From contig CBFFRQ010000089.1 of NCBI GenBank assembly GCA_965644315.1, positions 62,001 to 126,000 on the forward strand: 64,000 bases of DNA, given 5' to 3'. This document shows, in pieces, positions 1 to 24,719 of this stretch; position 1 is the stretch's first letter, and each line of letters begins with the position of its first letter. The DNA is from Caecitellus pseudoparvulus. Its lineage: Eukaryota; Protista; Bigyra: Bicosoecida. Below the pieces are notes generated by a model that was not told the origin of the DNA, did no database searches, and saw only the letters and a list, made by a program, of their open reading frames with translations. The translations under genes were made by a program, and so were the position numbers.

Positions 1-1166
1 GCACTCCGACAACGCTTGCGGCGGGTCCGTACGCTGCGGCGAGCATCCAGGCGGCGACAGCGTGCAAGGGGTGCGATAAGATCATCGAGTGGCCCGTTCT
101 TTCATGCAATCCAACGTAAAAAATGTGCTTTCGAGGTACAAACACAAGCTGATGCTGGTGGGTCCTTTCAGCTTCTTCACGTGCTTGGAGCCAGCCCTTG
201 TCGTCCTTGCGCCAGCCTGCGGGCCAGGCAGCCACCGGGAGCGAAGCAGGACCCACGTGCGCAGACTCTTCAGATCGCCAGGCCACACTACAACCTTCAT
301 CTGTGGTATCATGCGGGACCCATCCTGCGCTGGAGCTGTCTTGGTACAGCTCCCCGTCCAACTTGCCCGATCCTCCAGACCAGTGGACCACAGCGTCGAT
401 GCCTTGCAGTGCGCTCGTACCAGAGGCCCCTCCACCCATTTTCGACAGGGCCAGGGATGCCCAGCATGTTGTTAGTTCAGCTGCAACGTGAGCAGCTTGT
501 GGCGCCCATCGCTTCGCCATGTGAGTTGGCAAGCCGCTCAAGCAGCCTGGCAGCACCACTATGGCATCCAAGCTCAGCCCTGTCACCATCAAACCTTTGA
601 TAGAAAGTTCCATGTTTGACGCCCTGCCGTATTTAGTTCGTGGATCCAGTGCCAGCAGCAAGTTTGGAGGCTGCCGACCGTCAGAGCAAAATGCGTGGCG
701 CAATGCTGGCTCTGAGAGGTTCACACGCTTGACATCCTCGAACACAGGCGAGGGGGATGGCAGAGGGGTCGATGAGTGGGAGGCAGCAGAGGTGCTTGGG
801 GCGATTGATGATGAAGCTGATGCTCCGAATGAGGGGGAAGCGTTTGGGGTCGGCACCTCGCGTCGATTGCGGCCTGGACTGCTCCCGTCTGCCGCTCCTG
901 CACCATCGCCCCCGAGTGCAGTGGAGTTGTGCTCGGAGTCATCTGATCGCAAGGAGGAAGTTGAGCTCCCTTTACCTGCTTGGCTCGGAATCCCAAGGGC
1001 CAGATCTGCAGAAAGCAAGGTTGCGTTGTGCAGCGTTTCGTGGAAGTGCCGACACCAGACCTGCTCTCTCACAAGCAACCACCGACACTAGCAGCAAGGC
1101 GACGGGAGAAAATCGATGGCATGTAGATAGTTCTTCTTCCTGGCGATCGCTAGCACTGCCTGCCAT
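1..1166 (-). CDS. O-fucosyltransferase-like glycosyltransferase, left copy (5' part; continues beyond the window edge)
   Basis: Reverse-complement copy of 9289-10454. ATG at 1166 (MAGSASDRQEEE...), and the frame stays open to position 1. Confidence 0.75.
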
Positions 1167-1855
1167 GGTACTTGATCAGCTGCCGAGCGCGCCTTTGGGA
1201 GTGGAAGTGTGGCCTTGACGCCAACTCGCTCCTGCATCCAGTGGCATGCTGTAAACACTTAGGGCGATCAGCTCTCACTTGTGTCTGAGCGTTTCGTGGA
1301 GATGTGGTTTATTTTGTGTTGCGGAAGTCTCTCAATGCTGCTGGCGTGCTTGAGCATTGCCATTCTTTCTCTCTCCTGCACCAGCCACAATGCTGCTTTT
1401 GTCACAGCTTACGGAGGCCACACCAGGCCCTGGCGTTCGCCTCACACCAGGGGGCTCAGGGGTGTCCGGAAAGCTATTTCCGCACCTTTTTGCTGAGATG
1501 CCGGACACCCCAACCTGAGGGGGGGTGCCCCCTGTGGACCCCCCCTCCCTCGTCGCCCGTGTCCAAGGCGCTGGGAGACGCTCATCCTCCATCTGCCTGC
1601 CAGCGCTGGTTCCCGAGCAGGGCCAAGTGCCACTTTGCCGTCAGTACACCAGACCACATGAACGATTTAGTTGTGGGGCTTGATATTTACGCCCCTAGGC
1701 TCCTGAACACAACCAGACTCGTTTGCAACGGAGGTGCTGTCAGCCGGGGTTTCGGTCACGTTTCACTTTCGCTGCATGATGGCAGAGGGCGCGGCAGAGT
1801 CTGAGAAGGCTGTGACTGTCACTAAGCTCCCTCAAATTCTTAATTTCTCACATAG

Positions 1856-2900
1856 GTGCAAGGCCCTGCCCACTATGGCTGTCTCTTGCGAGTGCTTTGC
1901 AGTCAGGACGCATGCCGTCACTTCTGCGAGACGAAGACCGTGAACCAGGGGGAGGCTGCAGTTCAGAACTGGAAGGCTGTGTGCCAAGATCCGCGTATTG
2001 GCGACTTCCCCCTGCTTGCAATTCTTGGGCTGAAGGATTGGAAGGCAAAAGGGAACAGTCTCGGGGATTTCCAGCGGTCAGATTCGCGGACTGGGAAACC
2101 AATCCAGTGGTCCCAGACTCTGAAGTGCTTTGTTGAAGCATGAAAGGAAACGCTAATCAGAAAGCCCTTTCCGGCCAAGCATCGCATGACCAAGCGAGAA
2201 GTCCTTGCACTGGCTAAGACGTCAACTTCTTAGAAGCCCATGAAAGCTCAGCCTGGCAGTGAGGCGCACATTGCCCTGCGAGGCGATGCACGGAACCTCG
2301 TACATGAGGCACAGGTGCTTCTGCAGACAGCACCTGTGTCGGCAAAGGCGATCGCATGTGACAGCAAGTCTTGCTCACGAGTGGTTCGAAAGCTTCTGGT
2401 GCAGAGCTTCACTTCGATTGGGCTGTCGCCGGAACAGATCGCGAAGGTCACGACCCTTGAGAACCACCAGCTGATGGCCTGATGGGGCTCAGAAGCCTCT
2501 TCAAACACGACGCACTGCCACATTCGACGAGCAGCTGGCCACATTGCTGCTGATTTGCGCATGAATCTGGCAGAGGGGCCTTGTGGGTGACTGGCGTGAC
2601 TTCGATACGCTCTGCGGGAGTCAAAGAATGCTTGCATCCGGTGCGGTCTGCAGCGACAGCACAAACCTAGCCGCATTCTGCAAGCATGTGGAGGCATGTA
2701 GGAGGGGGAAACGAGCTCTTCAGCCCCTCCTTTCTCATGTCGCGCGGGCAGTGTACCCAACGCCGGTCACAAGTGCAGGCGCTGAGCGTTTCTTCTCCGT
2801 GCTGACCGACTAGTGTGCCAGTGGTAAGAGGGCCAGGACACACACAACTGTTTGGCAGCGAACTGTTGTTGCTTTCCAATCAACAGTATGTTGCTCAGCG
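1856..2900 (+). pseudogene. hAT transposase C-terminal remnant
   Basis: PLLSHVARAVYPTPVTSAGAERFFS (~2725-2800) matches the hAT dimerisation consensus P-L-x-x-A-x-x-x-P-x-[TS]-S-A-x-x-E-R-x-F-S. It is followed in another frame by ELLLLSN. Upstream segments are broken by stops (2141, ~2231, 2480) and frameshifts. Confidence 0.8.
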
Positions 2901-3770
2901 CAGCAAGGACTGGCTGACCCCCTCCTTCAAAGTGAGCAGCTCTTCAGTCCGCCCTGGGCGCCAGGAGCAGGGCCAGGCACTCGGCAAGAGCCCGAATGGG
3001 CTACTTGCGCCTGGTTGTTGGTGGCACGAAGAGGGTTCGTGCAGGAGGAGCGCCTCCAAGGGGTGCCAAGAAGGCGCCGAGGTCTGGTGGAGGGAAGCAG
3101 GGATCACTTCTTGGGGTAAGGGGATGCTGACCAGGTGCTGAAGTGAGTTTGCCAATGCAATATCGAGTTTGGGTGTAATTTTCTTTGCGGGCTTTGCTTT
3201 CAGGCCTGAGTCACTGCTTGCGGAGTCAAGTTTCAATGATGGTCCAAGCGGGTGGATGCCTGAGCTCATTGAAGGCACCGCTCCTGCGTGATTTTACCCC
3301 CCTTTTGCGAAATTTGGGGAAGGTTCCACAGCAAAGTGTGTCTGCATTCTTTTTCCACCCCTCATTGCTTCCGCGCCTTGAACAGGATTGAGTGCGCAGA
3401 GCTCTGGCCATCCAGGCAAGCGACACCAGACAGACCGCAGATCACCAAGCCAACCGAAACAGTGACTTGCAGGCAATATCGTGCACTTTTGGCACTATTT
3501 GGGCTTGGTACCGTGTTGAGTAGGACAAGGTTGCCTGTCCAAATGGAAAACCGCAGCAGTATCTATTCAAGTTGTCGAAGAGACCATACAGTTGCTCTCG
3601 TGCTCTGCCCAGGACCCGGTACCCCTCGTGAAGCAACTTCACAAGCACACAGATTCACAGAGGATGACACAAGAAGACATGTTCTACCCATAAATGCTGC
3701 TATGGTCCACAGGTTATCATCTATTGAGGTCTTTGAGCGGGGGGTACGGGGACTGGCCGAAGGCCAGTTC

Positions 3771-3790
3771 CCGGACACCCGGGTGTCCGG
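3771..3790. repeat. Perfect 20-bp palindrome CCGGACACCCGGGTGTCCGG in the hAT subterminal region (twin at 6664-6683)
   Basis: Read directly. It is made of two head-to-head copies of the TIR core and is a likely transposase-binding subterminal repeat. Confidence 0.85.
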
Positions 3791-4132
3791 CTGAGGGGGG
3801 CTTCGGCCTGTTGCCTGACACGCGGAGGGGGCGGAGCCGGACACCTTTGAGGGGCATGCTCCACACATTCTTGCGCACCAGGCGGCACCCACCTGCAGAT
3901 GCTTTCCTATTCGCTTCTCCGAACTTCGTCTTGCTCTTGCTTTGAGGTGCCCGACCAACTCGGCAGCCCGTGCTCCACAGCGACGCTGCTCGTCACCAGC
4001 ACGTCGCAACAACCGGCATGGGAGAACCCAGCAGCAAGTCGAGACACCGCCAGTGCTTTGGCTGGGATCGATCTCATTTGTAAGTGCACGCTAGGAAAGC
4101 TTGCTCTGCGCTCTTCCTTGCGATTCATTGCC

Positions 4133-5110
4133 ATGCTCCACAGTGCAATCACCCTCGTCTTGGCTATTTCCGCTGCCTTCTTGCTGTTGCTGTTGGTACA
4201 GAGTCGATCGCAGCTTCAAGCCGAGCAAGCCGGCAGGCATTCTGGATACAAAGGGGCGGGTTTCCCTTCTGAAGTGCAAGCTGGGGAAAAGGCGACTGCC
4301 TCAGCACCTAGCGTTCGGGGCGCAACTGCGCCAACTCCAACTCAGGCTCCGCAAGCACGCAAGCGTAACCAGTGCGATTGGCTGAAGGCAGCGGTCGATG
4401 CTCCCACTGAACAGGATGTGAATGTCTTTCAAAAACACTCACACACTCAGAGTGGCGAAGACAAGCTTGTCGTGGAGCACTACCCAACTGTGGCGCTGCG
4501 CAAGGGTGGCACCATCTTGGAGTCTGGCGCATTCGATGGCAAGCGATTCAGCACTTCCTGGGCGTTTGAGCGCACCCTGCAGTGGAATGCCATCCACATT
4601 GAGGCAAACCCTCGTACCTTTAAAAGTCTTGAGGTAAACCGCCCACCCAGTGAACGGGTCATCAACCTGAACATCGCACTCTGTGACAAGCCTCGAGAGG
4701 TGCACTACGTAGACCATGTTGACCCATTCCCTGCAGCTGGCATCTGGGAGTTCTTGAGCATGCGCATGCGCCGGACGTACTACCCTGACATTCCTATTTT
4801 TGCTGAGAAGCCTGAGGGAGCAAAGACCACAATCGTTACCCCCCTGCAGTGTCTGCCGCTGGACCGTGCGTTGCCGCCAGATCGCCATAACATTCACATT
4901 TGGGTGCTGGACGTGGAAGGAGCGGAGGTGGAGGTGCTTCAGGCCACGGACTTTTCGAAGCTCAGTTTTGGAGTCATCATTAAGGAGACTGTGGATGACT
5001 ACATTCGTGAGCAGCAAGCAACGGAGATACTGAAACGCAACGGCTACGTGCGGGTGAACGAAGTCGAACGCTCCACCTGGTATGTGAATGAGTGCCTGCT
5101 GGACGTTTAG
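4133..5110 (+). CDS. FkbM-family (Methyltransf_21, Star-like) SAM-dependent methyltransferase, type II membrane protein, 325 aa
   Basis: N-terminal anchor MLHSAITLVLAISAAFLLLLLV. Motifs TQSGED, LESGAFDGKRFSTSWAFERTLQWNAIHIEANP and VLDVEGAEVEVL. Intronless. Confidence 0.88.
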   Translation: MLHSAITLVLAISAAFLLLLLVQSRSQLQAEQAGRHSGYKGAGFPSEVQAGEKATASAPSVRGATAPTPTQAPQARKRNQCDWLKAAVDAPTEQDVNVFQKHSHTQSGEDKLVVEHYPTVALRKGGTILESGAFDGKRFSTSWAFERTLQWNAIHIEANPRTFKSLEVNRPPSERVINLNIALCDKPREVHYVDHVDPFPAAGIWEFLSMRMRRTYYPDIPIFAEKPEGAKTTIVTPLQCLPLDRALPPDRHNIHIWVLDVEGAEVEVLQATDFSKLSFGVIIKETVDDYIREQQATEILKRNGYVRVNEVERSTWYVNECLLDV

Positions 5111-6604
5111 TGCGCATTAAGCTCCCCAATGCATGCGACTGTGACCACCTGTGCTGTGAACCCACCATCATGAGATTTCTGAGGGGGGCGACATGCCTTT
5201 GGGGGGTTGTCCTCGAACAGGTATAGGTGGTTGGGGTGGGGCAAACACCCTCTTGGGGGTACACTGGCGAAAAGGTAGCTGGCTGTGCATTGCTGGGGGG
5301 GGGGGGGCTGCGGCACCTTCTAGCTCGCGCTGGCCTGCCATACTCCAGCAGGCAGCGTTGTGCACTGCAATGCATGCCCCCGCGTCCACCACACCCGGCT
5401 CCGCGCACTCAAGCATCTGGCCATGCATCTGCGCCGCTGGCCGCCTCTGCCATCAAGAGCCACTCGTGCAGCCCAGCACTGTGACGAGCTTCCCTTGGTC
5501 AGTCAGGGCGGTACACAATGTCTCCTGCAGCATCGCGTCTCAGATGGCCTGTGCAGGTGGGGGGAGGATGCTCGCGTGGCTCTACACCCTGACACCTGCA
5601 GCGACGGTGCAGCCGCTTTCTGCACAAGTCACCAGCGCAGCAGCCTCGTGCACTCACCATGGCAAGCTCGCGTCACAGTGGGGCTTGGCTCTCATGACCA
5701 GGCCGCCAGGTCCTCCATTCCTGTGAAAGGGGGGGGGGCAGTGGCATGGGTGATGTTGTGGGAATGCCAGACACCGGCTGCATCGCCAGGCATGGTGAGG
5801 AGCGCGAGCGGGCCACGCACCATTCAGGCCGTCCCAGTACAGTATGCGGCAGTCAGGCAGGTACTTGGATCATCCCAGCGAGCACTGTGAATGTCTGACC
5901 GCGTGGCGTACGTGTTTTGCGGGCGAGGGTGCCGCGACTGCGCAAAGGGGCGGCGACGGAGGCAGGCGGCACCAAAGACCAGAGCAGGCAGTCCCACCCA
6001 CCCCCAAAGGAAACTGCCGCGCTTCTAGTAGGCACCGATAAACATCATATCAATGGTCTCATTTCTGTGGCGCTGGAGCTGGCACGGGTGTGGGGCGGTG
6101 CCTTGCAATGTGCCTCAGCGTGGGCACGAAACGCCACGCGGAGCGGGGTGCTACCCCTGTCCCAAGGCACCGCTCAAAGCATCCATGGAGCGCAGTCTAC
6201 GATGCAGCAAGGTCGATTTCCTGAAAAAGGCGTGCTCTGCCAGGGGGGAGCTCGGGTGCGGGGTTCCTGCACGTAGTGGAGCATTGGTGTGACTCGGCTG
6301 GCGACGCCAACACTGCGAGCGGCTTGGCAGGCCCATGCACGGGCCTGCAGCCTGGATTGGCACCTGCAGGCTGCGGCCATTACACTCCTTCGCGCCGTCA
6401 TGTGTCTCACTGCGCAGGAGCGGGCGCCAAGGGGGTGAGGTGTTCCCTGCCGTTGCAGGCGAAACGTCTGTCACGCAGACTGTGTGCCGCTCACGTCTGG
6501 TCACTCGTGCAGGAACCTGCAGGCCATGGCTCCAACACTGTGCAAGTTTACACTGCGAGGACAAAACGACACGCTCTGCTCAGATTTGATTAAGGCGGGC
6601 ACCT

Positions 6605-8998
6605 CAAAGGTGTCCGGCTCCGCCCCCTCCGCGTGTCAGGCAACAGGCCGAAGCCCCCCTCAGCCGGACACCCGGGTGTCCGGGAACTGGCCTTCGGCCA
6701 GTCCCCGTACCCCCCCCTCAAAGACCTCAATAGATGATAACCTGTGGTCCATAGCAGCATTTTATGGGTAGAACATGTCTTCTTGTGTCATCCTCTGTGA
6801 ATCTGTGTGCTTGTGAAGTTGCTTTACGTGGGGTACCGGGTCCTGGGCAGAGCACGAGAGCAACTGAATGGTCTCTTCGACAACTTGAATAGATACTGCT
6901 GCGGTTTTCCACTTGGACAGGCAACCTTGTCCTACTCAACACGGGGCCAAGCCCAAATAGTGCCAAAAGTGCACGATATTGCCTGCAAGTCACTGTTTCG
7001 GTTGGCTTGGTGATCTGCGGTCTGTCTGGTGTCGCTTGCCTGGATGGCCAGAGCTCTGCGCACTCAATCCTGTTCAAGGCGCGGAAGCAATGAGGGGTGG
7101 AAAAAGAATGCAGACACACTTTGCTGTGGAACCTTCCCCAAATTTCGCAAAAGGGGGGTAAAATCACGCAGGAGCGGTGCCTTCAATGAGCTCAGGCATC
7201 CACCCGCTTGGACCATCATTGAAACTTGACTCCGCAAGCAGTGACTCAGGCCTGAAAGCAAAGCCCGCAAAGAAAATTACACCCAAACTCGATATTGCAT
7301 TGGCAAACTCACTTCAGCACCTGGTCAGCATCCCCTTACCCCAAGAAGTGATCCCTGCTTCCCTCCACCAGACCTCGGCGCCTTCTTGGCACCCCTTGGA
7401 GGCGCTCCTCCTGCACGAACCCTCTTCGTGCCACCAACAACCAGGCGCAAGTAGCCCATTCGGGCTCTTGCCGAGTGCCTGGCCCTGCTCCTGGCGCCCA
7501 GGGCGGACTGAAGAGCTGCTCACTTTGAAGGAGGGGGTCAGCCAGTCCTTGCTGCGCTGAGCAACATACTGTTGATTGGAAAGCAACAACAGTTCGCTGC
7601 CAAACAGTTGTGTGTGTCCTGGCCCTCTTACCACTGGCACACTAGTCGGTCAGCACGGAGAAGAAACGCTCAGCGCCTGCACTTGTGACCGGCGTTGGGT
7701 ACACTGCCCGCGCGACATGAGAAAGGAGGGGCTGAAGAGCTCGTTTCCCCCTCCTACATGCCTCCACATGCTTGCAGAATGCGGCTAGGTTTGTGCTGTC
7801 GCTGCAGACCGCACCGGATGCAAGCATTCTTTGACTCCCGCAGAGCGTATCGAAGTCACGCCAGTCACCCACAAGGCCCCTCTGCCAGATTCATGCGCAA
7901 ATCAGCAGCAATGTGGCCAGCTGCTCGTCGAATGTGGCAGTGCGTCGTGTTTGAAGAGGCTTCTGAGCCCCATCAGGCCATCAGCTGGTGGTTCTCAAGG
8001 GTCGTGACCTTCGCGATCTGTTCCGGCGACAGCCCAATCGAAGTGAAGCTCTGCACCAGAAGCTTTCGAACCACTCGTGAGCAAGACTTGCTGTCACATG
8101 CGATCGCCTTTGCCGACACAGGTGCTGTCTGCAGAAGCACCTGTGCCTCATGTACGAGGTTCCGTGCATCGCCTCGCAGGGCAATGTGCGCCTCACTGCC
8201 AGGCTGAGCTTTCATGGGCTTCTAAGAAGTTGACGTCTTAGCCAGTGCAAGGACTTCTCGCTTGGTCATGCGATGCTTGGCCGGAAAGGGCTTTCTGATT
8301 AGCGTTTCCTTTCATGCTTCAACAAAGCACTTCAGAGTCTGGGACCACTGGATTGGTTTCCCAGTCCGCGAATCTGACCGCTGGAAATCCCCGAGACTGT
8401 TCCCTTTTGCCTTCCAATCCTTCAGCCCAAGAATTGCAAGCAGGGGGAAGTCGCCAATACGCGGATCTTGGCACACAGCCTTCCAGTTCTGAACTGCAGC
8501 CTCCCCCTGGTTCACGGTCTTCGTCTCGCAGAAGTGACGGCATGCGTCCTGACTGCAAAGCACTCGCAAGAGACAGCCATAGTGGGCAGGGCCTTGCACC
8601 TATGTGAGAAATTAAGAATTTGAGGGAGCTTAGTGACAGTCACAGCCTTCTCAGACTCTGCCGCGCCCTCTGCCATCATGCAGCGAAAGTGAAACGTGAC
8701 CGAAACCCCGGCTGACAGCACCTCCGTTGCAAACGAGTCTGGTTGTGTTCAGGAGCCTAGGGGCGTAAATATCAAGCCCCACAACTAAATCGTTCATGTG
8801 GTCTGGTGTACTGACGGCAAAGTGGCACTTGGCCCTGCTCGGGAACCAGCGCTGGCAGGCAGATGGAGGATGAGCGTCTCCCAGCGCCTTGGACACGGGC
8901 GACGAGGGAGGGGGGGTCCACAGGGGGCACCCCCCCTCAGGTTGGGGTGTCCGGCATCTCAGCAAAAAGGTGCGGAAATAGCTTTCCGGACACCCCTG
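6605..8998 (-). mobile_element. hAT element, copy 2 (inverted)
   Basis: CAAAGGTGTCCGG at 6605 and CCGGACACCCCTG ending at 8998. Flanks in element orientation are AGGGGGCT and AGGTGCCC, which do not form a TSD. Confidence 0.85.
7555..8599 (-). pseudogene. hAT transposase remnant (copy 2)
   Basis: Identical translation to 1856-2900 (ORFs 7642-7872, 7973-8215, 8312-8599). Confidence 0.8.
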
Positions 8999-9288
8999 AG
9001 CCCCCTGGTGTGAGGCGAACGCCAGGGCCTGGTGTGGCCTCCGTAAGCTGTGACAAAAGCAGCATTGTGGCTGGTGCAGGAGAGAGAAAGAATGGCAATG
9101 CTCAAGCACGCCAGCAGCATTGAGAGACTTCCGCAACACAAAATAAACCACATCTCCACGAAACGCTCAGACACAAGTGAGAGCTGATCGCCCTAAGTGT
9201 TTACAGCATGCCACTGGATGCAGGAGCGAGTTGGCGTCAAGGCCACACTTCCACTCCCAAAGGCGCGCTCGGCAGCTGATCAAGTACC

Positions 9289-15100: not shown

Positions 15101-16381
15101 TCATGATCAAGCTGTGGTTTGACACAGTGGAGTGGACCCGGACGCCTGCATTGGGCGTGGTGTCTCCCAATTGCTCCTTCCAGGGGATGCTGTTGCTCGC
15201 CAACGAGCCGCCTTGGACTTGGCTGAGCCAGCCGATATCCAGGCCTTCATCGACTGCGCCCGCCGCATCTTGCAACGCAAGTCCCTGTCAGACTCCCAAA
15301 AGACACAAGTCCAAGAATTCCTCACAGCCTATGGGTGGGCCCTGTATGGGCCAGGGCGTGCAGTTGGGGCTGCCGCAAAGCTTCGCGAGCACGCCCCCCT
15401 CGCTCTGGCTGCTGCATGTGCCACTTCAGCTTGCATGCTGCTCCGTCGGTGCCAAGGAGATCACTTCACGCCAACTCAAGCTGGGCTGCACCCGAGCGGG
15501 GTGCCCATCCTTCCCCTTCACATTGGGCCCTGCACTCACAAGCAGGCCTCGGCGGCACTGGAGCGGGCTGTAAGCCTGTTTCGCCAGGTGTGGGCGTCTC
15601 AGTCGCGGGGTGGCGCAGGCACTGCCGTGCGAGGCCGCACCACACGCGGCATCCTGGACCCCAAGTCCTCCTTCCCCGCCACTCGCGCTCGGGTCAAGGC
15701 GTCATTGCAGAACGACGTGGGGCTCCAAGGCTTGCTGGATGGGCGTGACGCGGTGCACGGCGCCACCACCACCGGGGCAATGAGAGCCTGCACTCAGGCA
15801 TGCGGCACATGGTGTCAGCGGGCACATCCACTCGCCTGGATGTTGCCGAAATGAACCTCACGCTGTACTGGCTGGAGAAGAACAAGGCCACTGCTGCCAA
15901 GCTGCTGTCCAAGTGTGCGAGCGATAAATGCCGACAAGAAGAGACACGCAGCAAGTCTCAAGACGTTGCAGACACTCTGAAGTTTTGCTCTGTACTGACT
16001 GGTGATGTAGGTGGCTTTGCTCGAGGTACCATGACAGCAGCCTTGCAGAGCTGCCCGGATGCATCGGCCCCTCCCACGTTTGATGAAGCCAGGGCCTCCG
16101 GCCTGCCCCTGTGCAACAAGGCCACCTCGTCTGTCACGCCAGAGGTTGAAGAAGATATTCGCCGACTGCTCAGGGAGGAGAGGAAGACGCAAGAGGCCAA
16201 GACTGCCAAGTACAGCCCCAACACAGCAGCGTCCCGCATCGCCTCAGCCGCTCACGCCACTGTCGGCCAGGTCGAGCGAGTGGCCAGCTTGATGCAGCAA
16301 GAAGAGCAGTTGGCCCAGCGGGAGAAGCGACCAAAGCTATGGAGTATCAGCCCGTCGAGTGCCAAGCGGGCTCGGCGGTGA
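12165..16381 (+). pseudogene. Decayed large DDE transposase-like gene of the C/D-x-x-H class (Mutator/IS256/ISL3-related; DUF6729-like N-terminal region)
   Basis: One frame runs from 12684 to 14780 with only isolated stops, then frameshifts. Ordered motifs: CP..C..G (~13900), SVEWTF (14538), VVGRYG...ESAANL...PSVITVAN (14798-14965), VDP*HFASRV (15028) and TTG-NESLHSGMR (15779). No termini found. Confidence 0.6.
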
Positions 16382-16769
16382 GGACTGGAGCAGGGCCAAC
16401 TACTCTCCGGCCGGATGAAGGGAGTTTTCATCCGCACACTTGCTTGCCTGCCTGAACGCAGCCGAAGGAGAGGGGCTGTGCTCGCCCCACCAAGTCTTCC
16501 CCATTGCCTTCTCTGCCGGCCCATGGACACTTGTGTGTCATCAGTCTCCCTTGAATGTTGTGCTGCTTGTACCAGACAGTGCGGATGTCCACGGGGGACA
16601 CGCTGCCATTCTCCCCAACAGACAGGCAGACCGATCCACGCCAACTGAGGTCCGAGCTCAAAATCCACAAACACTGCAGCTACGAGCACACCCCTATTCA
16701 GGGTGGTCTCCCTTCTCCAAATGCGCCCTCCGTTCCTTGGGTAGGACTTTGCATTCTTGCGCTGGGAAG

Positions 16770-19700
16770 ATGCGCTGCCCCAACGCTATAAAGCGTCGCG
16801 GCGACTGCACTGCCAAGTGTCGGCTATGTCTGCTGCAGCCTTGCCTGCAGCGAACGTACAAGATAACCCACCTTGTTGGCTTACCACTTGTGGCATTACT
16901 GCTTTGTACAGTGGGATATGTCGGTTTCTTCTCGCTCCACTCGTCAGCCATTCAAGAAGAAGTCTGGCGTGGCGAGGCTGTTCCCAACGCGTTTCGAGCT
17001 CAGAGGGTGGCCTCTGCCCTGCCCTGGGAGCAGGGCAGAGGGGGTCAAGTAAGTCTCATCACGCACAGTGGCAAGCGTTCAGGCGTGGATGCAGCTGAGC
17101 ATGCTGCTTCCGTGTCTGGCTGGCTGAAGGCCCTTGTTGTGCCATCCAGTGTCTCGGAAGTGGTGGTGGTAGTGGACGACTCTTGGGATGCATCGGCGCT
17201 GCCAAGACATTCACACCAAGGAATACCCATAGTGACCCAATTGACCACAAGTTCAGAGCCTTTCCCACTGCGAACACTTCGGGAAGCTGCTCGGCAGCGC
17301 ACTGATGTAGTGCTGCTCGTTGATCCCTTTGCACCAGCTTCAGCTCAGGCGATGGGCAGCCTCGCGCACTTCAGCGAAGAGAACCTGTCAAGTATCGTCG
17401 GCCCGATCACTATCAGCGAAGGCAGAGCCTCGTCCCCCAACTTGAATTTCGGTTTTGTGGCTCTGAGCCCGGCAACAGCCGGCATTCTGGCACTTGAGGC
17501 TTCAGCGCACCCTCGCGCGTGCCCACACCAACTGGCCACACAAGCTGGCGTTCCCCAAAAAGTTGTATCGCTGCCCGGGTCTGAGCAGAGCTTGCTCGTA
17601 GCGTTCTCTTCGTCGCCAAGTACAGTGCTGACTGGGAACGTGAAGACAGACTGGGTGCCTCAGGGTCCAGTCCCTGCGAAGTCCCCTGCCAGCTGTCCCC
17701 CCATGCAGGAGGCAGGATCGACTTTCGGTGCCCATTCAACTGCTAGTGCAATGAGCCCCCTGCCAACTGTGCTGAGTGCACCATCCAAACATCTTCGCGT
17801 GTTCGTCTATGACATGCCTGCGGAGTTTGGCTCGAACCTCCTTGCTGCTGCACAGCACAGGAGCGGAAAAACCAACAAGTGCTCCTCTTCGTTCTATGCG
17901 AGCGAACAGCGAGTCCACGAGTACCTCATGGCCTCCCACTGGCGCGTGCAGGACCCAGCGCTAGCTGACTTGTTCTATGTTCCCGTTTATGTTGCTTGCG
18001 CTGTGAAGTCGGGGCTTCGAGTTCAGCTTCAGCAGGAAGGCACGTCAAAGCCTGGCTTTGCACCAGACTTTAGAGCACTTCAATCCCTGATGCATGCTGC
18101 GTTGGCACACATTCGGCGCGAGTACCCCTTCTGGGACATGTCTGGCGGCCGGGACCACGTGTGGACCTTCACTCAAGGTGCTGGAGCAGCGGTGTTCGGC
18201 GAAGAGTTGTGGGACGAAGTGCAGCACAGCATCTTCTTGACGACGAATGGGCAGCTGTCCGAGAAGCACTTCAGGTTCGGACATGACATTGTAATTCCAT
18301 CCTTCATGGGCAGGAAGCCAGGCATTCTGGCCCATGACCCGCTTTCGTCGCCGCCGTCGCGGGACACAGCTGTGTACTGGGGTGGCTCACTCATGGAGGA
18401 TCGGCGGTACTCGAGAGGGATGCGGCATGCTCTTGTCGACGCGTTCAATGCGGGTGAGCTGGCTGGTGACGTGCTTGTGGAAGTGTCGGCAGGCGCGTGG
18501 CGAGATACCTTCACCGCCCAGCTCTCCAGTCGATTCTGCTTGGCGCTCGAAGGCTGGTGGGCATGGACTCCCCGACCATTTGAGTCTGTGCTTCAGGGCT
18601 GCGTGCCTGCGCTGGTTTCAAATGACATCGTTCTGCCATTTCAGCGGTTTCTGCCATGGGACACCTTTTCCCTCAAGTTGAGCCCCACCCGGGGAATAAA
18701 AGCAATCGTGAGCCTTCTGCGGGCCATTCAAGGTGCTGAGCTGAGATCTCTCCAAGCAGGGGTCCTGCGTCACTGGCGAGCCTTCCACTGGACAGCACCT
18801 TACGGACAGGCTGGAGCATACCTTGGGGCAGAGCTGCTGAATCGAGTGCAGCAACTCAAGAGTGAGCGGATGCTCGCTACGAGCCAGACTTGGCTACCCT
18901 TGCAGCTGTCGGCAGAGTGGGGCGTGCCTGTTGGGGTGCCTGCAGTTTCTGCGGGTTTGATTGGCTTGGATAGCTCGACTCAGTACATCCTGCAGCGAAC
19001 CATGACATGCGCCGCACTGAAAGCAGCACAGCGACAGCGTTGTGACCTCTCCGGGCGTACCCATTGCTTCAAGGAAGAGCTATCGCCATTGATTTGGCAG
19101 GCTTGCCCAGATCTTGACTTCGGCTTCAGCTCGCTGCGAGAAGCCATTCGCCTGGGGGGCGACGTTCGCTCTGGTGCAGCTTCACAGCCAGTCGTTCGGA
19201 CCATCCAGTCGTCTACAGGCGATGCAGTGTTTGTCATCACCCCACATCTGCATGTGGGCCACGCGGTGACTCCCAGAGCGGGTGAAGAGCCGTCCAGTGG
19301 TGATCTTTGCCTTGCAACGCAGCTCAGCGTGGACAGGCTTCAAAACCTGCTTGATTTGGTGGAGAAGTGGAACGGCCCCGTCTCCGCCGCAGTCCTTCTG
19401 CAAGGGAGCAGCTGGTCACATCAGCGCATCTTGGAGGTGATCCGGCGACGCCCCAGAGCTGCAAAGTGGCTGTCACTGCATGTAGTGGTGCAGCTGGGAG
19501 CTGGTGTCGATTCGCACAGAGTTTACCCTGTGAACATGCTTCGGTCCATTGCACAGCAACTGGCATCCGAGCACATGGTGCTTGTGCTTGATGCTGATGT
19601 TGTGCCGTCAGCAGACATGGCAGGTGTTGCGGCAGCCCTTGCGGCAGCCCAAACCGCGTTCGCGGACGAGCTGCCGGATGGTTCTGCTGCATGCCGCCCC

Positions 19701-21325
19701 GGCAAGGATGTCAACTCGGATGGCTTCAACGCAGGTCCCCACAATCCGTTGGCTGACACGCAGTCCTGCGCTGGCTTGAGGGCATTTGTGCTGCCGTCCT
19801 TCGAGGGGCTGAAGAACAGCCAGAGTGCGACGAGCGTGACCACACGTGAAGCACTTCGAAGCAAGGTCATGGACGGCACCATGAGCCCGATGCATGCGTA
19901 CTACCCTCGAGCGTATTTCCCGGTGGACTATGGGCGCTGGGTCGAAAGCACCGATGACTCAGTGTACACTGTCCCGTACTCTCCTCACTTCGAGCCTTAT
20001 GTCATCGTTCCCCGGTACGCCCCACTCCCAAACGCGAGCTTCATCCAGCGGGGGCTGAACAAAGCGCAGTGGGCATATCACTTGCATGCTGCTGGGTACA
20101 GCTTCACCGTGCTGCAAGGCGTGTTTTGTGTGGATGTGCCAACCGGCTTCACTGGGCAGCGACCGCGAATGGTGGGCGTGTTTGACTTGTGGGAACGTAT
20201 GTCCCAGGATTTCCATGAACACTTCGGAGTTGTCCGCTACAACCACAAGAACGTGAATGCTGTGGGGCCCTTCCTGCGCCAAGTAGCCTCCAGTCTCCCG
20301 TGGGCTGACAAGGCGGATGCGTTCATTGTGAAGCGAGGGGGGGCAAGGGTTTCTAAGGCGACTGGCGGCGGCGCCAGTGCTGATTTGGAGCGCTTGCATG
20401 GACAGCGAGTGCTTTCAGTCTATTTAAGGGTCTGTGCCCCTGATCACGAACTTGTTGCCCTCGTAGAGCACTACTGCGGGATTCCGCTTGTCAACGACGT
20501 GACAGTAAGCTCGCGTTGCGGCCAAGTGCCGCGTTGGGCGGCTGACGTGTGCCCGGCAGGGAGTGTCATGCTCGTCACGAGTGGACGCTCCAGCAAGGAC
20601 CCTGTGACGCTGAGCCAAATGCCAGCCCCTGCGTACGTGCTGCTCGTCTTTGCCTTCACGCTTACATTGTCAATGTTTTACCCACCTTCTCTTTCTCTTT
20701 CTTACAGAACTGATTGCGTCCTTCACGTTGAGGACAATGTCAAGCTCTCTGTGCAGGATATCGCGGCTCTTCATTCTGCTTGGATTCAGAACCCCAACGT
20801 GCATGTGGGCCTCAACCCTCTTTTCATTCAAGTACCATCCGTATCGGAAGATGAGTCGCAGTGGAGTGCTCACAAAGTCGACCCACTTCAGCTTGGAATC
20901 GCTTACAATTCCATGCAGCTCAACGCTTCACTTCTGCATGCAGATTGGTTGCAGCTCTTTTCCAGGTTGGACAGCGAAGTAAGGAGCGCCGGCTTGCAGC
21001 ATGTGCGCAACCCGTTGCCAGTACACGACTGCGTTTTGTCTCGCAGATCACAATTCCTAGGCATGGCTCGCCGACGTGTGAGCAAGTGTTCATTTCGTTC
21101 GTCGTCGCGCGATACAGCCAAACTCCCCCGCTCGTCGTCATCCGACAAGGACATGTTGGGAAAGGTGAGCTACGTGGCGCAGAGTTGGCTGCTGTGAACA
21201 GCTCTGCTGGCCTGCTGGATTTGATGGGTGCACTTAAAGAGTGCGGCCATGCGGCGCTGAAGCATTTCCTGGGGAACCCGTTGTTGCGAAGTACGGCGCG
21301 TGTTTTCAATGAAGTTCCATTCTAA
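16770..21325 (+). CDS. Multidomain glycosyltransferase: TM anchor + GT2-like GT-A + GT47 (exostosin) + GT49 (LARGE/B4GAT1-like) + GT64 (EXT C-terminal)
   Basis: TM LVGLPLVALLLCTVGYVGFF. GT2-like EVVVVVDDSW...TDVVLLVDP...IVGP (17157-17403). GT47 LRVFVYDMP, DPALADLFYVPVY, PFWDMSGGRDHVW, SRFCL...FESVLQGCVP. GT49 LATQLSVDRL, YPVNMLRSIA, VLDADVVP, FEPYV, GLNKAQW. GT64 TDCVLHVEDN, CEQVFISFVVA...PP, C...FLGNPLL after removing introns 20633-20707 and 21003-21046. Confidence 0.88.
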
Positions 21326-21928: not shown

Positions 21929-24316
21929 CTACACACCAAACAGTTGCCGCACTTGAAAGGTGTGCCAGCCCGAGGTTGGAGCAACTTTGGGTGGCGCATC
22001 ACGAGAGTACGGGTAGCGGCTTAGCACCTGATCTGTCGGCAGCTTTTGCCACTCCCACTCTGTTCGCATGGCCATTGCAGTTTCTGACAATGTGCTGTCC
22101 ATGTCAGCAAGCAGAGTTTCGCACCCGGCTGCCAGAGCCATGTCCGTCTGCAGCCGCAGCAGCGGTGAGCAAGCAAAGTCCGTGCCGCGACCACCTGTCG
22201 CATGCATGCAAGTCGAGAACGGATCATTGCCGCCCATGCTAGGGACTATGTCACCGAGTGACAGCAGCGAGCCGGGTAGGCGGCAGGTCGCATTCGGCGA
22301 CAAGCCGGACTCAGGTGGCCCTGCACACTGTGGTAAACGCTGCCAGGCTGCCAAAAGGGAAGGCATTGGTGTCATGACATAGATGGGGAGCCCTGCAGAG
22401 AACCGCACAAAGTGGTTCAGGAGCACGAGGGCAGAAGGCTCTCCTTCTGGCCACTTCGCGTGCTTCAGCCAACGTGCATAGAGCACGTTGCTCAAAGGTG
22501 AGCGGAGCAGAGAGTCAACCTCCGCATCTGACAGGATTTGCTTGCTCCAGTGACCATCTTGCACCCTCATCTGCGCGCTAATGCATCGCTCACTTGCGGC
22601 TGCTGACCGATTCTCATCCCTCCCTCCACCACCCATTGCTGCTGCACGACGCGCGAGCAGTTGCCCCACGCTCAGTGGCACAGCTGCAAGGAGCGGACTG
22701 AGAGAAAACACGCCAAGTGCTTGTGAAGGCCGGAGGTTCTGGCACCGGTGCTTTCCGTACTGGTCATCGCACCAGTCATATGGGAAAGAATACAGCACGC
22801 TCCGGCTGGCGTTCAAGGATCTCTCAACGCAGATTCCGTCAGGAGCTGGTCTGCAAGAATCGTCCACGGTAGCGTTGCAGTGCTGCAGTGGCTTCAGCCC
22901 ACTCCCCAGCAGCATTGGTCTTGCATACCTTTTGGCGGCAGCGATCTCTGCAATTCGATGCGAGCCTGCCCCGACAGAGAGCTCCTTGAAACCCGGTGTC
23001 TCCAGGAAAATTGCATCCAAGCCGCATTCTTTACCAGCCACAGGCATATGCTGCAGGCCCAGGGATTTGGCATTCAAAGGAGCATGAAACACGGACAACA
23101 CTCCCGCCCCAAACACGTCTTTTTGTGGGAGGGGCTTCGGCGAATGTTTGCGACCACGGTCAGAGTGGTGAGGAAGTAAAGGTTGAAAGGACAGGCGCAC
23201 ATCATACCATCCTGATCCTCGACGCCACAGCTGAAACAAGGTCGACAGAGCCTGCATCTGTGTCTTGAGCTGATTGTTTGGCCCGAAAAGGCCTGCTGCA
23301 GCTAGCAGTCTGCGTTGAGGGCGTGGCGCTGCTCGAAGGCCTTCAAGTACCCCGCTCACTTCAAGCAGTGCAGCAATGCGCTGCCCCCAGCGCTCCAATG
23401 CAGCCTGTGCGCTGCCACCTGCCGGCTGCCGTGCATGGCGCTCCGCCGCTGGCTTCAGTACGTGGGTCCGGCAGCCGTAGCTTGGGGCGAACCTCCCATA
23501 TGGCCAAGGAGAGCTCGCCGGCACCAGCTCCGCTGTGCTCCCAGGCGCAACCCAACAAGACAATGCCTGCAGCGGTGTTACACCTGTCCACGGCCACCCA
23601 CCAACCGCCTGCCCTGCCAGGTACGCTGGCAGCCACTGCCATGACGGCGCACTTCGTGTGGCCCACAGCAGCACCCGTGCCAGCCACACGCCCTCCACGC
23701 AGGCATGGCGGGAGGCCCACTGAGACCCCTGCACATCTTCACACTCGCTGAACTGCGAGCTCCCATCTCTTGCGGGGGCCTGGTACACAGTCACTCTGCT
23801 GGTGCATCGGTCTATTTCCGCAACCTCATCTGCACTCAATGACGTCCCAGCGCCCAGCACCAGGGCCAAGCTAACTCGAGTATCAGCAGCCCCACTACTG
23901 CACCATGCACTGGGCCACTTTGTGCCACTGGACGGCAGCACATGGAGCAGGACCAGTCCACCCTCCATGGCTTGTGAAGCGTTATGGTGCCACGCCGCAG
24001 GCACCAGGCCTTGTGCCAGAGACGCCCACGCAGCTGGCAGGGACGGCAAGGCAGCATGGAGAGTCGCTGTATTATTCGCATGATTACCTTTAAGCTCAGA
24101 TGACCCTCGAAGGCCATTTCCACCGAGCTCCACTTGCAGAATGTTTCCAGTGACGAACAATCCATTCACGAAAGCCAGGTGAAGGAAAACTGCACAGGCG
24201 GCCAGAAGCCAGCACCAAAAGTAGCGGATAGAAGTGCTCCGTTTGACGCTTTCAAGACTAGCGGAGCTGCTTGCGTTGGGCGAAAGCGCTGATGGTGCCT
24301 GTGGCGCCTCTGGCAT
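21929..24316 (-). CDS. Second O-fucosyltransferase-like GT-B glycosyltransferase, type II membrane protein (~795 aa)
   Basis: TM YFWCWLLAACAVFLHLAFV. Motifs GPNNQL, ISAQMRVQD, PIYVMT and TDMALAAGCETLLADMDSTLS. First ATG at 24316. Confidence 0.65.
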   Translation of the reverse strand: MPEAPQAPSALSPNASSSASLESVKRSTSIRYFWCWLLAACAVFLHLAFVNGLFVTGNILQVELGGNGLRGSSELKGNHANNTATLHAALPSLPAAWASLAQGLVPAAWHHNASQAMEGGLVLLHVLPSSGTKWPSAWCSSGAADTRVSLALVLGAGTSLSADEVAEIDRCTSRVTVYQAPARDGSSQFSECEDVQGSQWASRHACVEGVWLARVLLWATRSAPSWQWLPAYLAGQAVGGWPWTGVTPLQALSCWVAPGSTAELVPASSPWPYGRFAPSYGCRTHVLKPAAERHARQPAGGSAQAALERWGQRIAALLEVSGVLEGLRAAPRPQRRLLAAAGLFGPNNQLKTQMQALSTLFQLWRRGSGWYDVRLSFQPLLPHHSDRGRKHSPKPLPQKDVFGAGVLSVFHAPLNAKSLGLQHMPVAGKECGLDAIFLETPGFKELSVGAGSHRIAEIAAAKRYARPMLLGSGLKPLQHCNATVDDSCRPAPDGICVERSLNASRSVLYSFPYDWCDDQYGKHRCQNLRPSQALGVFSLSPLLAAVPLSVGQLLARRAAAMGGGGRDENRSAAASERCISAQMRVQDGHWSKQILSDAEVDSLLRSPLSNVLYARWLKHAKWPEGEPSALVLLNHFVRFSAGLPIYVMTPMPSLLAAWQRLPQCAGPPESGLSPNATCRLPGSLLSLGDIVPSMGGNDPFSTCMHATGGRGTDFACSPLLRLQTDMALAAGCETLLADMDSTLSETAMAMRTEWEWQKLPTDQVLSRYPYSRDAPPKVAPTSGWHTFQVRQLFGV

Positions 24317-24458
24317 CCCACCTCCAAATGCGAAGCCGGCAACTTCCCCGCCCAATTGAAGAAAACTGCCAACGACTTAGACGAACAGGGTCTGTTGTAG
24401 AGATCACAACGCCCAAATGCAAGATAATGAATGACATGTGTGTACATTGGTAGGATGT

Positions 24459-24536
24459 CAGGGGTGTCCGGCAGCAAGCAGCCGAAGGCCCCCTTCAACC
24501 GGACACCCAAGGATCGGGGAACTGGCCATTGGCCAG
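24459..24536 (+). mobile_element. Solo terminal fragment of the same hAT family
   Basis: CAGGGGTGTCCGG followed by GCCGAAGGCCCCCTTCAACCGGACACCC...GGGAACTGGCCATTGGCCAG, which aligns with the subterminal sequence at ~6647-6701. No partner end seen. Confidence 0.7.
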
Positions 24537-24719
24537 GCCAAATGGGCCAAAAAATTCCTAACATGGCCCTGGTTTTGCGCTAATAGCTGCTGGGGGATGT
24601 TGTGAGAGTACAGGGGTGGTGGGCGAGCCACATACTGCTACCCGCCACATACAAAGAATGCACAGCCATGCAGGGAGACGCGAGCGCCGCACTCAGTGCA
24701 CACGATGTGACAGCTCCAC

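What the first reader, a model, noticed from the sequence alone, without database searches (positions are those of the whole stretch)
1..24536. Candidate eukaryotic glycan-biosynthesis gene cluster remodelled by DNA transposons
Seen: every intact gene in the first 24.5 kb is a type II membrane glycan-modifying enzyme (O-FucT-like x2, FkbM methyltransferase, four-domain GT, second O-FucT-like), interleaved only with transposon relics. The block is intron-poor and lower in GC than the housekeeping block starting at ~24.7 kb. Known: GT47, GT49 and GT64 enzymes build GAG/matriglycan-type chains, and some Methyltransf_21 proteins methylate sugars. Inference: a co-located polymerase + fucosylation + O-methylation pathway for a surface polysaccharide, analogous to bacterial capsule loci and unusual in a eukaryote.
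Basis: partly seen in the sequence, partly recalled or inferred. Interest (0 to 1): 0.82.

Follow-up and report, generated by a model that had tools for sequence, protein, structure and literature searches.

The report
Subtelomeric glycosyltransferase island reshuffled by transposons
The first 24.5 kb of the window is the right-hand part of a real, about 37 kb cluster of Golgi-type sugar-modifying genes near a chromosome end of a marine protist. It looks like a fast-changing accessory locus, recently duplicated and rearranged, not a proven single biosynthetic pathway.

Summary
The clustering is real. Between C89:49.7 kb and 86.4 kb (window end about 24.4 kb), every non-repeat gene is a predicted type II membrane glycan enzyme. 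In order they are: a STELLO-like GT, an unknown-domain+GT64 protein, a POFUT-like "gene A", an FkbM methyltransferase, a GT47+GT49(+weak GT64) giant, and an orphan "gene D". GT47, GT64 and GT49 have only 5, 8 and 3 loci genome-wide, so chance is unlikely (expected number of such runs ≤0.011 even with 300 glycan genes).

- "O-FucT-like x2" is one gene in the two arms of a ~9.65 kb near-perfect palindrome. Most of its left arm lies before the window.
- Gene D has no detectable homologue (0 hits in 1.84 billion proteins), so its "O-FucT-like" label is unconfirmed.
- The fourth GT domain is only weakly supported.
- No sugar-nucleotide synthesis or transporter gene was found among the large ORFs scanned.

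The island lies ~44-80 kb from a (CCCTAA)n telomere, holds four repeat families, and has a fresh ~660 bp gene-conversion tract. In a 90-96% identical metagenome relative, only the GT–gene D pair is kept.

Best reading: a hypervariable surface-glycan locus like the prasinophyte "outlier chromosomes". Co-expression could not be tested, since no run holding the stretch is on record as RNA.

The parts
1..1166 (-). Left-arm copy of gene A (POFUT-like), cut by the window start. The complete copy is at C89:61294-63166.
   Evidence: 100% identical full-length match at C89:61294-63078(-) and at 71377-73161(+). Arm identity.
1447..3855 (.). TE1, left copy: a ~2.4 kb element with terminal inverted repeats. 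Its inner terminus is the inner end of the palindrome arm.
   Evidence: Many 75-86% copies genome-wide. Termini read. No Pfam transposase hit.
3899..5110 (+). FkbM-type (Methyltransf_21) methyltransferase gene in the palindrome spacer. The likely start is the ATG at 4133, which gives an N-terminal membrane anchor.
   Evidence: PF05050 32.7 bits against a 22.7 cut-off. Anchor at residues 1-26 from M79. Paralogues on C54 (64%) and C19 (46%).
5165..6560 (.). TE3 relic filling the rest of the spacer.
   Evidence: At least 9 copies at 76-80% identity elsewhere in the genome.
6599..16258 (.). Right arm of the palindrome: TE1' at 6599-9010, gene A, a TE4 fragment at 11200-11822, and most of TE2.
   Evidence: Contig word depth of arm pieces is about twice that of spacer pieces in two runs of the organism.
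9289..11164 (+). Gene A, right-arm copy: a POFUT-like fucosyltransferase-superfamily candidate. Inferred exon 1 is 9289-9382 (tail + anchor), the inferred intron is 9383-9449, and exon 2 runs to 11164.
   Evidence: GT11 hit at the HVRRGD motif, 20.3 bits. HVRRGDW and TPxSTFSG are invariant in 7 family members. Top Foldseek rows are POFUT2/POFUT1/FUT8/NodZ but at E~0.3. Exon 1 is conserved in the C42 paralogue.
12094..16398 (.). TE2: a 4.3 kb repeat family with decayed ORFs. The near-identity of the arms stops inside it at ~16255.
   Evidence: More than 20 copies at 85-87%. Outer ends aligned. No Pfam hit on its ORFs.
16770..21197 (+). Multi-domain glycosyltransferase (1475 aa): anchor, N-terminal domain of uncertain type, GT47, GT49, weak GT64-like C-terminus.
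   Evidence: 98% identical protein P0001 in a relative. dN/dS 0.12. N-domain leads.
21929..24316 (-). Gene D: an orphan type II membrane protein (795 aa), convergent with the big GT.
   Evidence: No hit anywhere. dN/dS 0.185 against the relative's copy, so it is a constrained coding gene. Language-model features point to FUT8/O-FucT/XG_FTase clusters at 0.91. The AF2 model is unusable, pLDDT 29.
23375..24035 (-). A ~660 bp tract inside gene D that is 95-100% (about 98%) identical to the unknown-domain+GT64 gene 32 kb to the left (C89:~53800-54460), with sharp edges. This is a recent gene conversion or segment swap.

Best explanation
Window 1-24.4 kb is the right-hand two thirds of a ~37 kb subtelomeric island (C89:49.7-86.4 kb) that holds six different genes for Golgi-type, type II membrane glycan-modifying enzymes.

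SHOWN:
- The genes are intact. The three that could be compared with a relative or paralogue (big GT, gene D, gene A) are under purifying selection.
- They belong to mostly unrelated families and are separated only by four transposon families.
- The island has been reshaped very recently in three ways. A 9.65 kb inverted duplication has its inner ends at the termini of a TIR transposon and its outer ends inside two older copies of a 4.3 kb transposon. A ~660 bp gene-conversion tract links the two genes outside the arms. And the gene content differs from that of a close relative.

INFERRED:
- The enzymes decorate secreted or cell-surface glycoconjugates in the Golgi.
- The multi-domain GT may build a repeating backbone, in the manner of EXT (GT47/GT64) and LARGE (GT49).
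- Gene A would add fucose from GDP-fucose, and the FkbM enzyme would O-methylate a sugar.
- The genes need not form one fixed pathway. The island is best seen as a hypervariable accessory locus where duplication, transposition and conversion shuffle glycan-modifying modules and so vary the surface glycan. This would be analogous to the GT- and methyltransferase-rich outlier chromosomes of prasinophyte algae.
For: - Families and anchors.
- Rarity of the families genome-wide: GT47 5 loci, GT64 8, GT49 3, gene A family 6 matches, FkbM 3.
- Scan statistic: expected number of such runs is 2e-5 to 0.011 for 100-300 glycan genes in 30.6 Mb.
- No GT among nine large ORFs scanned in the 35 kb to the right.
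- Telomere array at C89:≤2001-5740. Lower GC. Repeat families.
- Palindrome and its 2:1 depth. Conversion tract.
- The relative keeps only the GT + gene D pair and has a GT77-like gene instead of the palindrome.
- Synonymous divergence from the relative rises from 0.06 in the flanking gene to 0.19 in the big GT and 0.43 in gene D.
- Other GT groupings in the same genome: C18 with GT64 + GT61 + GT77-like in a row at GC 0.58, C54 with FkbM next to a GT77-like gene, and C43.
- Precedent: PMC5082852 and PMC13213038.
Against: - There are no expression data at all.
- No glycan chemistry is known.
- Gene D and the N-terminal domain of the big GT have no assigned fold.
- Gene A's fucosyltransferase assignment rests on motifs and sub-threshold hits.
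- The total number of glycan genes in the genome was not measured. At ~500 the run would be expected 0.2 times by chance.
- Only one relative scaffold was available, and it is a metagenome scaffold that could be chimeric.
- The organism is not identified.
Confidence: 0.58

Rival explanations
1. The genes form one co-regulated pathway (backbone polymerase + fucosyltransferases + O-methyltransferase) that makes a methylated, fucosylated surface polysaccharide, like a bacterial capsule locus.
For: Unrelated enzyme classes that could act in sequence sit side by side. FkbM next to a GT recurs at C54. A GT-linked sugar O-methyltransferase has been shown biochemically in chlorovirus A064R (PMC9614988).
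Against: The cluster is not conserved in a 90-96% identical relative. Gene A's conserved locus is elsewhere. One FkbM paralogue has no GT neighbour. No sugar-nucleotide synthesis or transporter gene was found among the large ORFs scanned in the island. Gene D is not shown to be a fucosyltransferase. The genes are in mixed orientations and separated by transposons.
Confidence: 0.18
2. The grouping has no functional meaning. Dispensable, duplication-prone genes simply accumulate in a recombination-active, transposon-rich subtelomere.
For: Subtelomeric position. Recent duplication, conversion and transposon load. Variable content between relatives.
Against: The genes tested are under purifying selection, dN/dS 0.12-0.19. 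At least five unrelated glycan families and no other kind of gene lie in the 37 kb, while the nearer-telomere 44 kb holds mostly non-glycan genes. Similar GT groupings occur at non-terminal places such as C18:155-165 kb.
Confidence: 0.15
3. The palindrome, and so part of the cluster, is an assembly artefact.
For: Near-perfect long inverted repeats can arise from chimeric long reads. The runs that hold it may be the source of the assembly.
Against: It has a 2.7 kb unique spacer. The arms end at transposon features, not at arbitrary points. Arm contigs have about twice the word depth of spacer contigs in two samples, and a contig crosses the right spacer/arm junction. Differences are graded towards the spacer.
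Confidence: 0.05
4. The island is a remnant of an integrated giant virus, which often carry GT and methyltransferase genes, have lower GC and lack introns.
For: Lower GC, few introns, GT + FkbM content.
Against: No relative of FkbM or of the gene A family in 2.9 million viral contigs. No viral hallmark domain among the flanking ORFs. GT47, GT49 and GT64 with N-terminal anchors are typical Golgi enzymes. Paralogues lie in ordinary chromosomal contexts.
Confidence: 0.03

Closest known systems
Small outlier chromosome of Mamiellales (O. tauri chromosome 19) and the outlier chromosomes of Pseudoscourfieldia marina
   Same: Lower GC than the rest of the genome, transposon-rich, enriched in glycosyltransferases and methyltransferases with many orphan genes. 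Content differs strongly between close strains, and rearrangements are attributed to transposons (PMC5082852, PMC13213038).
   Different: Here it is a ~37 kb subtelomeric segment of an ~895 kb contig, not a whole small chromosome. No light-harvesting protein gene was found in the host genome, so it is probably not a green alga. No sugar-nucleotide enzymes or transporters were found among the large ORFs scanned. A link to virus resistance is untested.
Animal EXT1/EXT2 (GT47+GT64) and LARGE1 (GT8+GT49) bifunctional polymerases
   Same: The big ORF carries GT47 and GT49 domains over Pfam cut-offs and matches LARGE1 and EXT2 chains by sequence. It has a type II anchor. Two or more transferase domains on one chain suggests a repeating-unit polymerase.
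   Different: GT47 and GT49 are combined in one chain. The GT64-like part is borderline. The N-terminal domain lacks the DXD motif at the aligned place. No activity data. A paralogue on C62 lacks the GT64-like end.
Protein O-fucosyltransferases POFUT1/POFUT2 (GT65/GT68) and the wider GT11/GT23 fucosyltransferase superfamily
   Same: Gene A has an HxRRGD-type motif and a C-terminal STFS-type motif. By my own knowledge these are hallmarks of this superfamily. Its best fold matches, although not significant, are all POFUT2, POFUT1, FUT8 and NodZ.
   Different: No Pfam model reaches its cut-off. No PDB sequence hit. The model has low confidence, pLDDT 39.5.
Bacterial capsule / O-antigen loci
   Same: Clustered GTs and modifying enzymes, lower GC, mobile elements, high variability between close relatives.
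   Different: No operon, no flippase/polymerase/export genes, no precursor genes. The genes are separately oriented eukaryotic Golgi-type enzymes.
Chlorovirus PBCV-1 A064R (two rhamnosyltransferase domains + a SAM methyltransferase domain)
   Same: Shows that a sugar O-methyltransferase can be physically coupled to GTs that build the same glycan (PMC9614988).
   Different: It is a fusion protein of a virus. Whether its methyltransferase domain is of the FkbM family was not checked here.

Membership tests
Pfam Methyltransf_21 (FkbM) - ORF 3899-5110 | Score over the curated Pfam cut-off | tested here: met
   32.7 bits against 22.7, profile positions 3-148 of 173
GT47 (Exostosin) - ORF 16440-21197 | Score over the curated Pfam cut-off across the whole domain | tested here: met
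   160.5 bits, profile 2-292 of 293. Weak EXT2 PDB hits.
GT49 (LARGE-type) - ORF 16440-21197 | Score over the curated Pfam cut-off, plus a match to LARGE1 | tested here: met
   116 bits. LARGE1 chains at E 6.5e-15.
GT64 - C-terminal part of ORF 16440-21197 | Score over the curated Pfam cut-off | tested here: inconclusive
   20.6 bits against 21.3 in hmmscan. 23.3 bits in the six-frame genome search. Only profile positions 75-161 are matched.
GT64-like/GT-A - N-terminal domain of the big GT (the 'fourth domain') | Detectable profile similarity and a DXD motif | tested here: inconclusive
   No Pfam hit at E≤1. Atlas features 0.90 to GT64 clusters, with only 148 shared features. hhalign gives a 43-column match, E 0.004, probability 8%, with DPF where GT64 has DDD.
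O-FucT / fucosyltransferase superfamily - gene A | Pfam PF10250 or GT11 over its cut-off | tested here: not met
   Only GT11 at 20.3 bits against 23.9. No PF10250 row even at E≤10.
O-FucT / fucosyltransferase superfamily - gene A | HxRRGD-type donor-binding motif and C-terminal STFS-type motif (my own knowledge of the superfamily) | tested here: met
   HVRRGDW and TPxSTFSG are invariant in all 7 family members
O-FucT / fucosyltransferase superfamily - gene A | GT-B fold like POFUT/FUT8 | tested here: inconclusive
   Model pLDDT 39.5. The best Foldseek rows are POFUT2/POFUT1/FUT8/NodZ but at E 0.3-1.4.
O-FucT-like - gene D | Any sequence, profile or fold similarity to fucosyltransferases | tested here: not met
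   No Pfam hit, no PDB hit, 0 hits in the word search and in phmmer against 1.84 billion representatives. hhalign against the gene A family gives probability 0.2. Model pLDDT 29. The only lead is atlas features at 0.91.
Biosynthetic gene cluster for one glycan (capsule-like) | Co-location of unrelated enzyme classes beyond chance | tested here: met
   Six distinct glycan genes in 36.6 kb. Expected number of such runs ≤0.011 for ≤300 glycan genes.
Biosynthetic gene cluster for one glycan (capsule-like) | Cluster conserved as a unit in relatives | tested here: not met
   Only the big GT + gene D pair is kept in scaffold L015. The other neighbours differ.
Biosynthetic gene cluster for one glycan (capsule-like) | Precursor synthesis, transport or export genes included | tested here: not met
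   None among the large ORFs scanned by Pfam between C89:48.8 and 86.4 kb. Short or multi-exon genes could have been missed.
Biosynthetic gene cluster for one glycan (capsule-like) | Co-expression | not testable with these tools
   No run holding the stretch is on record as RNA. Seawater metatranscriptome contigs touched only repeats.
Outlier-chromosome-like hypervariable glycan compartment | Lower GC, transposon-rich, GT/methyltransferase-rich, variable between relatives | tested here: met
   compared with PMC5082852 and PMC13213038
Outlier-chromosome-like hypervariable glycan compartment | Role in resistance to viruses or grazers | not testable with these tools
   Needs infection or selection experiments

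The most novel reading that the evidence does not exclude
A probably heterotrophic marine protist (no light-harvesting protein gene was found) keeps subtelomeric and internal 'glycan variation islands'. In them, transposon-bounded palindromes and in-frame gene conversion swap modules between Golgi glycosyltransferases, including lineage-restricted enzymes such as gene D. This would generate strain-specific surface glycans as a defence against viruses or predators. It would be an independent invention of what prasinophyte outlier chromosomes and bacterial O-antigen loci do.
Probability: 0.3. Interest if true: 0.65.

Novelty: new member of a known kind. Interest (0 to 1): 0.45.

Why it matters
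Gene clusters for glycans are routine in bacteria but rare and poorly understood in eukaryotes. This locus gives a compact, datable example of how such a cluster is built and reshuffled. It shows a transposon-bounded palindrome that doubles a fucosyltransferase-like gene around a methyltransferase gene. It shows a fresh conversion tract that swaps a domain between two enzymes. And synonymous divergence from a close relative is three to seven times higher than in the flanking gene.

If the island controls surface glycan variation, it would extend the 'viral immunity chromosome' idea beyond green algae. It would also point to testable enzymes: a GT47-GT49 polymerase candidate, and an orphan type II protein under purifying selection with no homologue found in 1.84 billion cluster representatives.

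Tried and rejected
- Gene D could not be assigned. Pfam at E≤10, PDB sequences, the word-index search (C-terminal region), phmmer against 1.84 billion representatives, and hhalign against the gene A family all found nothing. AlphaFold with 3 sequences gave pLDDT 29.
- Gene A folded poorly (pLDDT 39.5), so its fold search is only suggestive.
- Pfam on the ORFs of TE1 and TE2 gave no transposase domain, so 'hAT' and 'DDE' stay unverified.
- The unknown 505-aa neighbour in the relative is unrelated to gene D or to the neighbour of the C62 paralogue.
- Rfam and tRNA scans of 1-25000 found nothing.
- Viral-contig scans for FkbM and the gene A family found nothing.
- Organism identity stays open. 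Pseudoscourfieldia marina fits in size, intron poverty and telomere type, but its GC is 57% and it is photosynthetic, while this genome gave no light-harvesting protein hit. The Cafeteria assemblies are 34-36 Mb at 70% GC and do not match 30.6 Mb.
- The first read-laying run failed technically and was repeated once.
- The spliced model of gene A was only reasoned from the sequence. The exons were not joined or searched as a joined protein; searches used the single exon 2 by reference.
Full report
WHERE THE WINDOW LIES
The window is G000:C89:62001-126000, from a 30.6 Mb genome in 215 contigs. The fetched left end of contig C89 (from base 2001) is a perfect (ACCCTA)n array, a rotation of CCCTAA, running to base 5740. 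This is a telomere, so the region under study lies ~44-80 kb from a chromosome end. Related DNA occurs in marine metagenomes. No light-harvesting protein gene was found in the genome. The organism is therefore an unidentified, GC-rich and probably heterotrophic marine protist. Other notes of this scan call it a marine flagellate; I did not test that.

GENE INVENTORY IN THE WINDOW
- FkbM: ORF 3899-5110+ passes the Methyltransf_21 cut-off (32.7 against 22.7 bits). From its internal ATG at 4133 it starts with a 26-residue hydrophobic anchor.
- Big GT: ORF 16440-21197+ (protein from 16770, 1475 aa) has GT47 at 160.5 bits and GT49 at 116 bits. Its GT64 match is borderline: 20.6 bits against 21.3, and 23.3 bits in the genome search. 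It matches LARGE1 and, weakly, EXT2 chains.
- N-terminal domain of the big GT: the ~285 residues have no Pfam hit. The only support is a language-model lead to GT64 clusters (0.90) and a 43-column profile match where GT64's DDD is DPF. 'Four-domain' is therefore three supported domains plus one uncertain one.
- Gene A: ORF 9377-11164+ has only a sub-threshold GT11 hit at an HVRRGD motif. An alignment with its paralogues and two metagenome proteins shows HVRRGDW and TPxSTFSG invariant. By my own knowledge these are the donor-binding and C-terminal motifs of the POFUT/FUT8/GT11 superfamily.
- Gene A fold: a low-confidence model (pLDDT 39.5) has POFUT2, POFUT1, FUT8 and NodZ as its best matches, but none is significant.
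- Gene A start: an upstream exon (ATG at 9289, 31 codons with a hydrophobic stretch), a 67-nt GT..AG intron (9383-9449) and a compatible phase are inferred from the sequence. The same exon is conserved in the C42 paralogue.
- Gene D: the 795-aa protein (21929-24316-) has a clear N-terminal anchor but no similarity to anything. That covers Pfam at E≤10, PDB sequences, the word search of its C-terminal region, and phmmer over 1.84 billion representatives. A profile comparison with the gene A family is null and the AlphaFold model is unusable (pLDDT 29). Only language-model features point to FUT8/O-FucT/XG_FTase clusters (0.91).
- Gene D is nevertheless a real gene. Against the relative's copy its dN/dS is 0.185.

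THE PALINDROME
Window 1-3694 is the reverse complement of 6761-10454. The identity continues left of the window for another 5.8 kb.

Aligned in full, the arms run from C89:~56200 to ~65855 and from 68599 to 78258. They show two differences in the outer 9.2 kb and about ten in the inner 350 bp. The inner ends coincide with one terminus of a 2.4 kb element with terminal inverted repeats (TE1). TE1 has many 75-86% copies in the genome.

The outer near-identity stops at ~16255, inside a 4.3 kb repeat (TE2, more than 20 copies). Both TE2 copies run on for ~140 bp in diverged form. The duplication therefore used pre-existing inverted TE2 copies on one side and a TE1 terminus on the other.

The 2.7 kb spacer holds the FkbM gene and a third repeat (TE3, at least 9 copies). 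In Logan contigs of two samples of the organism, error-free arm pieces have about twice the word depth of spacer pieces (~155 against ~73, and ~80 against ~42). One contig crosses the right spacer/arm junction. This supports a real duplication, although those runs may be the assembly's own source.

THE ISLAND IS LARGER THAN THE WINDOW SHOWS
Just left of the left arm lies a 1063-aa ORF with a C-terminal GT64 domain (112 bits). Left of that is a STELLO-like GT (37.7 bits). Then come Sec62, MORN, LMBR1 and Omp85 genes. To the right of gene D come a coiled-coil protein, an OSCA-like channel, a 4450-aa cadherin-domain protein, an ion channel and a DnaJ protein, with no GT.

So between C89:49.7 and 86.4 kb all six distinct non-repeat genes are glycan enzymes. 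Residues ~93-315 of gene D are almost identical to the N-terminal part of the 1063-aa GT64 protein. At the DNA level this is a ~660 bp tract (window ~23375-24035) at 95-100% identity (about 98%) with abrupt edges. It is a fresh gene conversion or segment swap between two genes 32 kb apart.

IS THE CLUSTERING MORE THAN CHANCE?
Genome-wide there are 5 GT47 loci, 8 GT64 matches, 3 GT49 genes, 6 gene A matches (two of them the palindrome copies) and 3 FkbM genes. Under uniform placement, the expected number of places with six glycan genes in 36.6 kb is:
- 2e-5 for 100 glycan genes;
- 0.011 for 300;
- 0.2 for 500.

I could not count all glycan genes, so this is a bounded estimate and not a full test. 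Local duplication explains only the shared domain and the palindrome. The families themselves are mostly unrelated.

IS IT ONE PATHWAY?
A metagenome scaffold (L015), 90-96% identical in DNA, carries the big GT (98% identical over the GT47-GT49 region searched) followed by gene D, as here. Upstream, however, it has a GT77-like gene and an unknown 505-aa gene, and beyond those the coiled-coil gene that in our genome lies on the other side. Our genome has those two genes only as 77-80% paralogues on C13.

Other observations point the same way:
- Gene A's tandem paralogues on C42 sit among housekeeping genes, and that locus is syntenic in the relative.
- One FkbM paralogue lies directly beside a GT77-like gene (C54). 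Another lies between exportin and a histidine kinase.
- No sugar-nucleotide synthesis or transporter gene was found among the large ORFs scanned in the island.
- Expression could not be examined, because no run holding the stretch is on record as RNA.

Together this argues against a conserved, self-contained pathway cluster. It favours a variable island in which glycan-modifying genes are gained, lost and recombined.

Synonymous divergence from the relative supports this: 0.06 in the flanking coiled-coil gene, 0.19 in the big GT and 0.43 in gene D. Identity also falls stepwise along the alignment. Further GT groupings exist in the genome: C18:155-165 kb has GT64, GT61 and GT77-like genes in a row at GC 0.58, and C43 has GT64 and GT49 genes 10 kb apart.

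COMPARISON WITH WHAT IS KNOWN
The closest described phenomenon is the small outlier chromosome of Mamiellales. It has lower GC, transposons and an excess of glycosyltransferases and methyltransferases. It rearranges, and its genes are over-expressed in virus-resistant Ostreococcus tauri (PMC5082852). The divergent outlier chromosomes of Pseudoscourfieldia marina are a second example (PMC13213038).

The present case shares the compositional, repeat, gene-content and variability features. It differs in three ways. It is a subtelomeric segment rather than a whole chromosome. It lies in an apparently non-photosynthetic host. And no sugar-metabolism or transporter genes were found in it. At the enzyme level, the big GT combines EXT-type and LARGE-type modules. 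A sugar O-methyltransferase coupled to GTs has a biochemical precedent in chlorovirus A064R (PMC9614988).

VERDICT
The interpretation as a capsule-like pathway is not supported as stated. The best-supported reading is a transposon-remodelled, hypervariable glycan-enzyme island. That makes it a new member of a known kind, of moderate interest.

Noticed in passing
C89:2001-5740 (locus L011:1-3740): A perfect (ACCCTA)n array with 623 copies and 100% matches. It is a TTAGGG-type telomere at the fetched left end of the contig, which makes the island subtelomeric.
   Followed up: partly
window 36101-49450 (-): A single 4450-aa open frame with cadherin and bacterial-cadherin-like domains. This is a giant candidate surface adhesin 12 kb from the island.
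   Followed up: no
alignment A2 (gene A family: window 9737-11161, L012, L024, L025, P0004, P0005): The C-terminal halves of the C89 copy and both C42 tandem copies are nearly identical, while their N-terminal halves differ. This suggests gene conversion among dispersed paralogues.
   Followed up: no
window 16536-28575 against L015: Synonymous divergence from the metagenome relative rises from 0.06 (coiled-coil gene) to 0.19 (big GT) and 0.43 (gene D). The relative also has the coiled-coil gene on the opposite side of the GT pair.
   Followed up: partly
G000:C18:155365-164721 (L035, L036): Three consecutive minus-strand GT genes (a 1595-aa GT64 protein, a GT61 and a GT77-like) in a 20 kb stretch at GC 0.58. 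TE1 fragments lie nearby, and a gene A paralogue lies 25 kb away.
   Followed up: partly
G000:C54:285280-288934 (L028, L029): An FkbM paralogue (64% identical) lies directly upstream of a GT77-like (PF03407) gene. This is a second FkbM-GT adjacency.
   Followed up: partly
window 5281-5508 and 5402-5427: Six linked base differences appear at about half the word depth in both runs of the organism, and in a seawater metatranscriptome contig, inside TE3. This is either a second repeat copy or heterozygosity.
   Followed up: no
whole genome G000: No match to the chlorophyll a/b-binding (LHC) family anywhere, so the organism is probably not photosynthetic.
   Followed up: partly
G000:C13:1164-2924 (L027): A 587-aa open frame with a strikingly AT-rich, Lys/Ile/Tyr-rich translation at the very start of a contig of this GC-rich genome. 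It lies next to the GT77-like/505-like gene pair.
   Followed up: no
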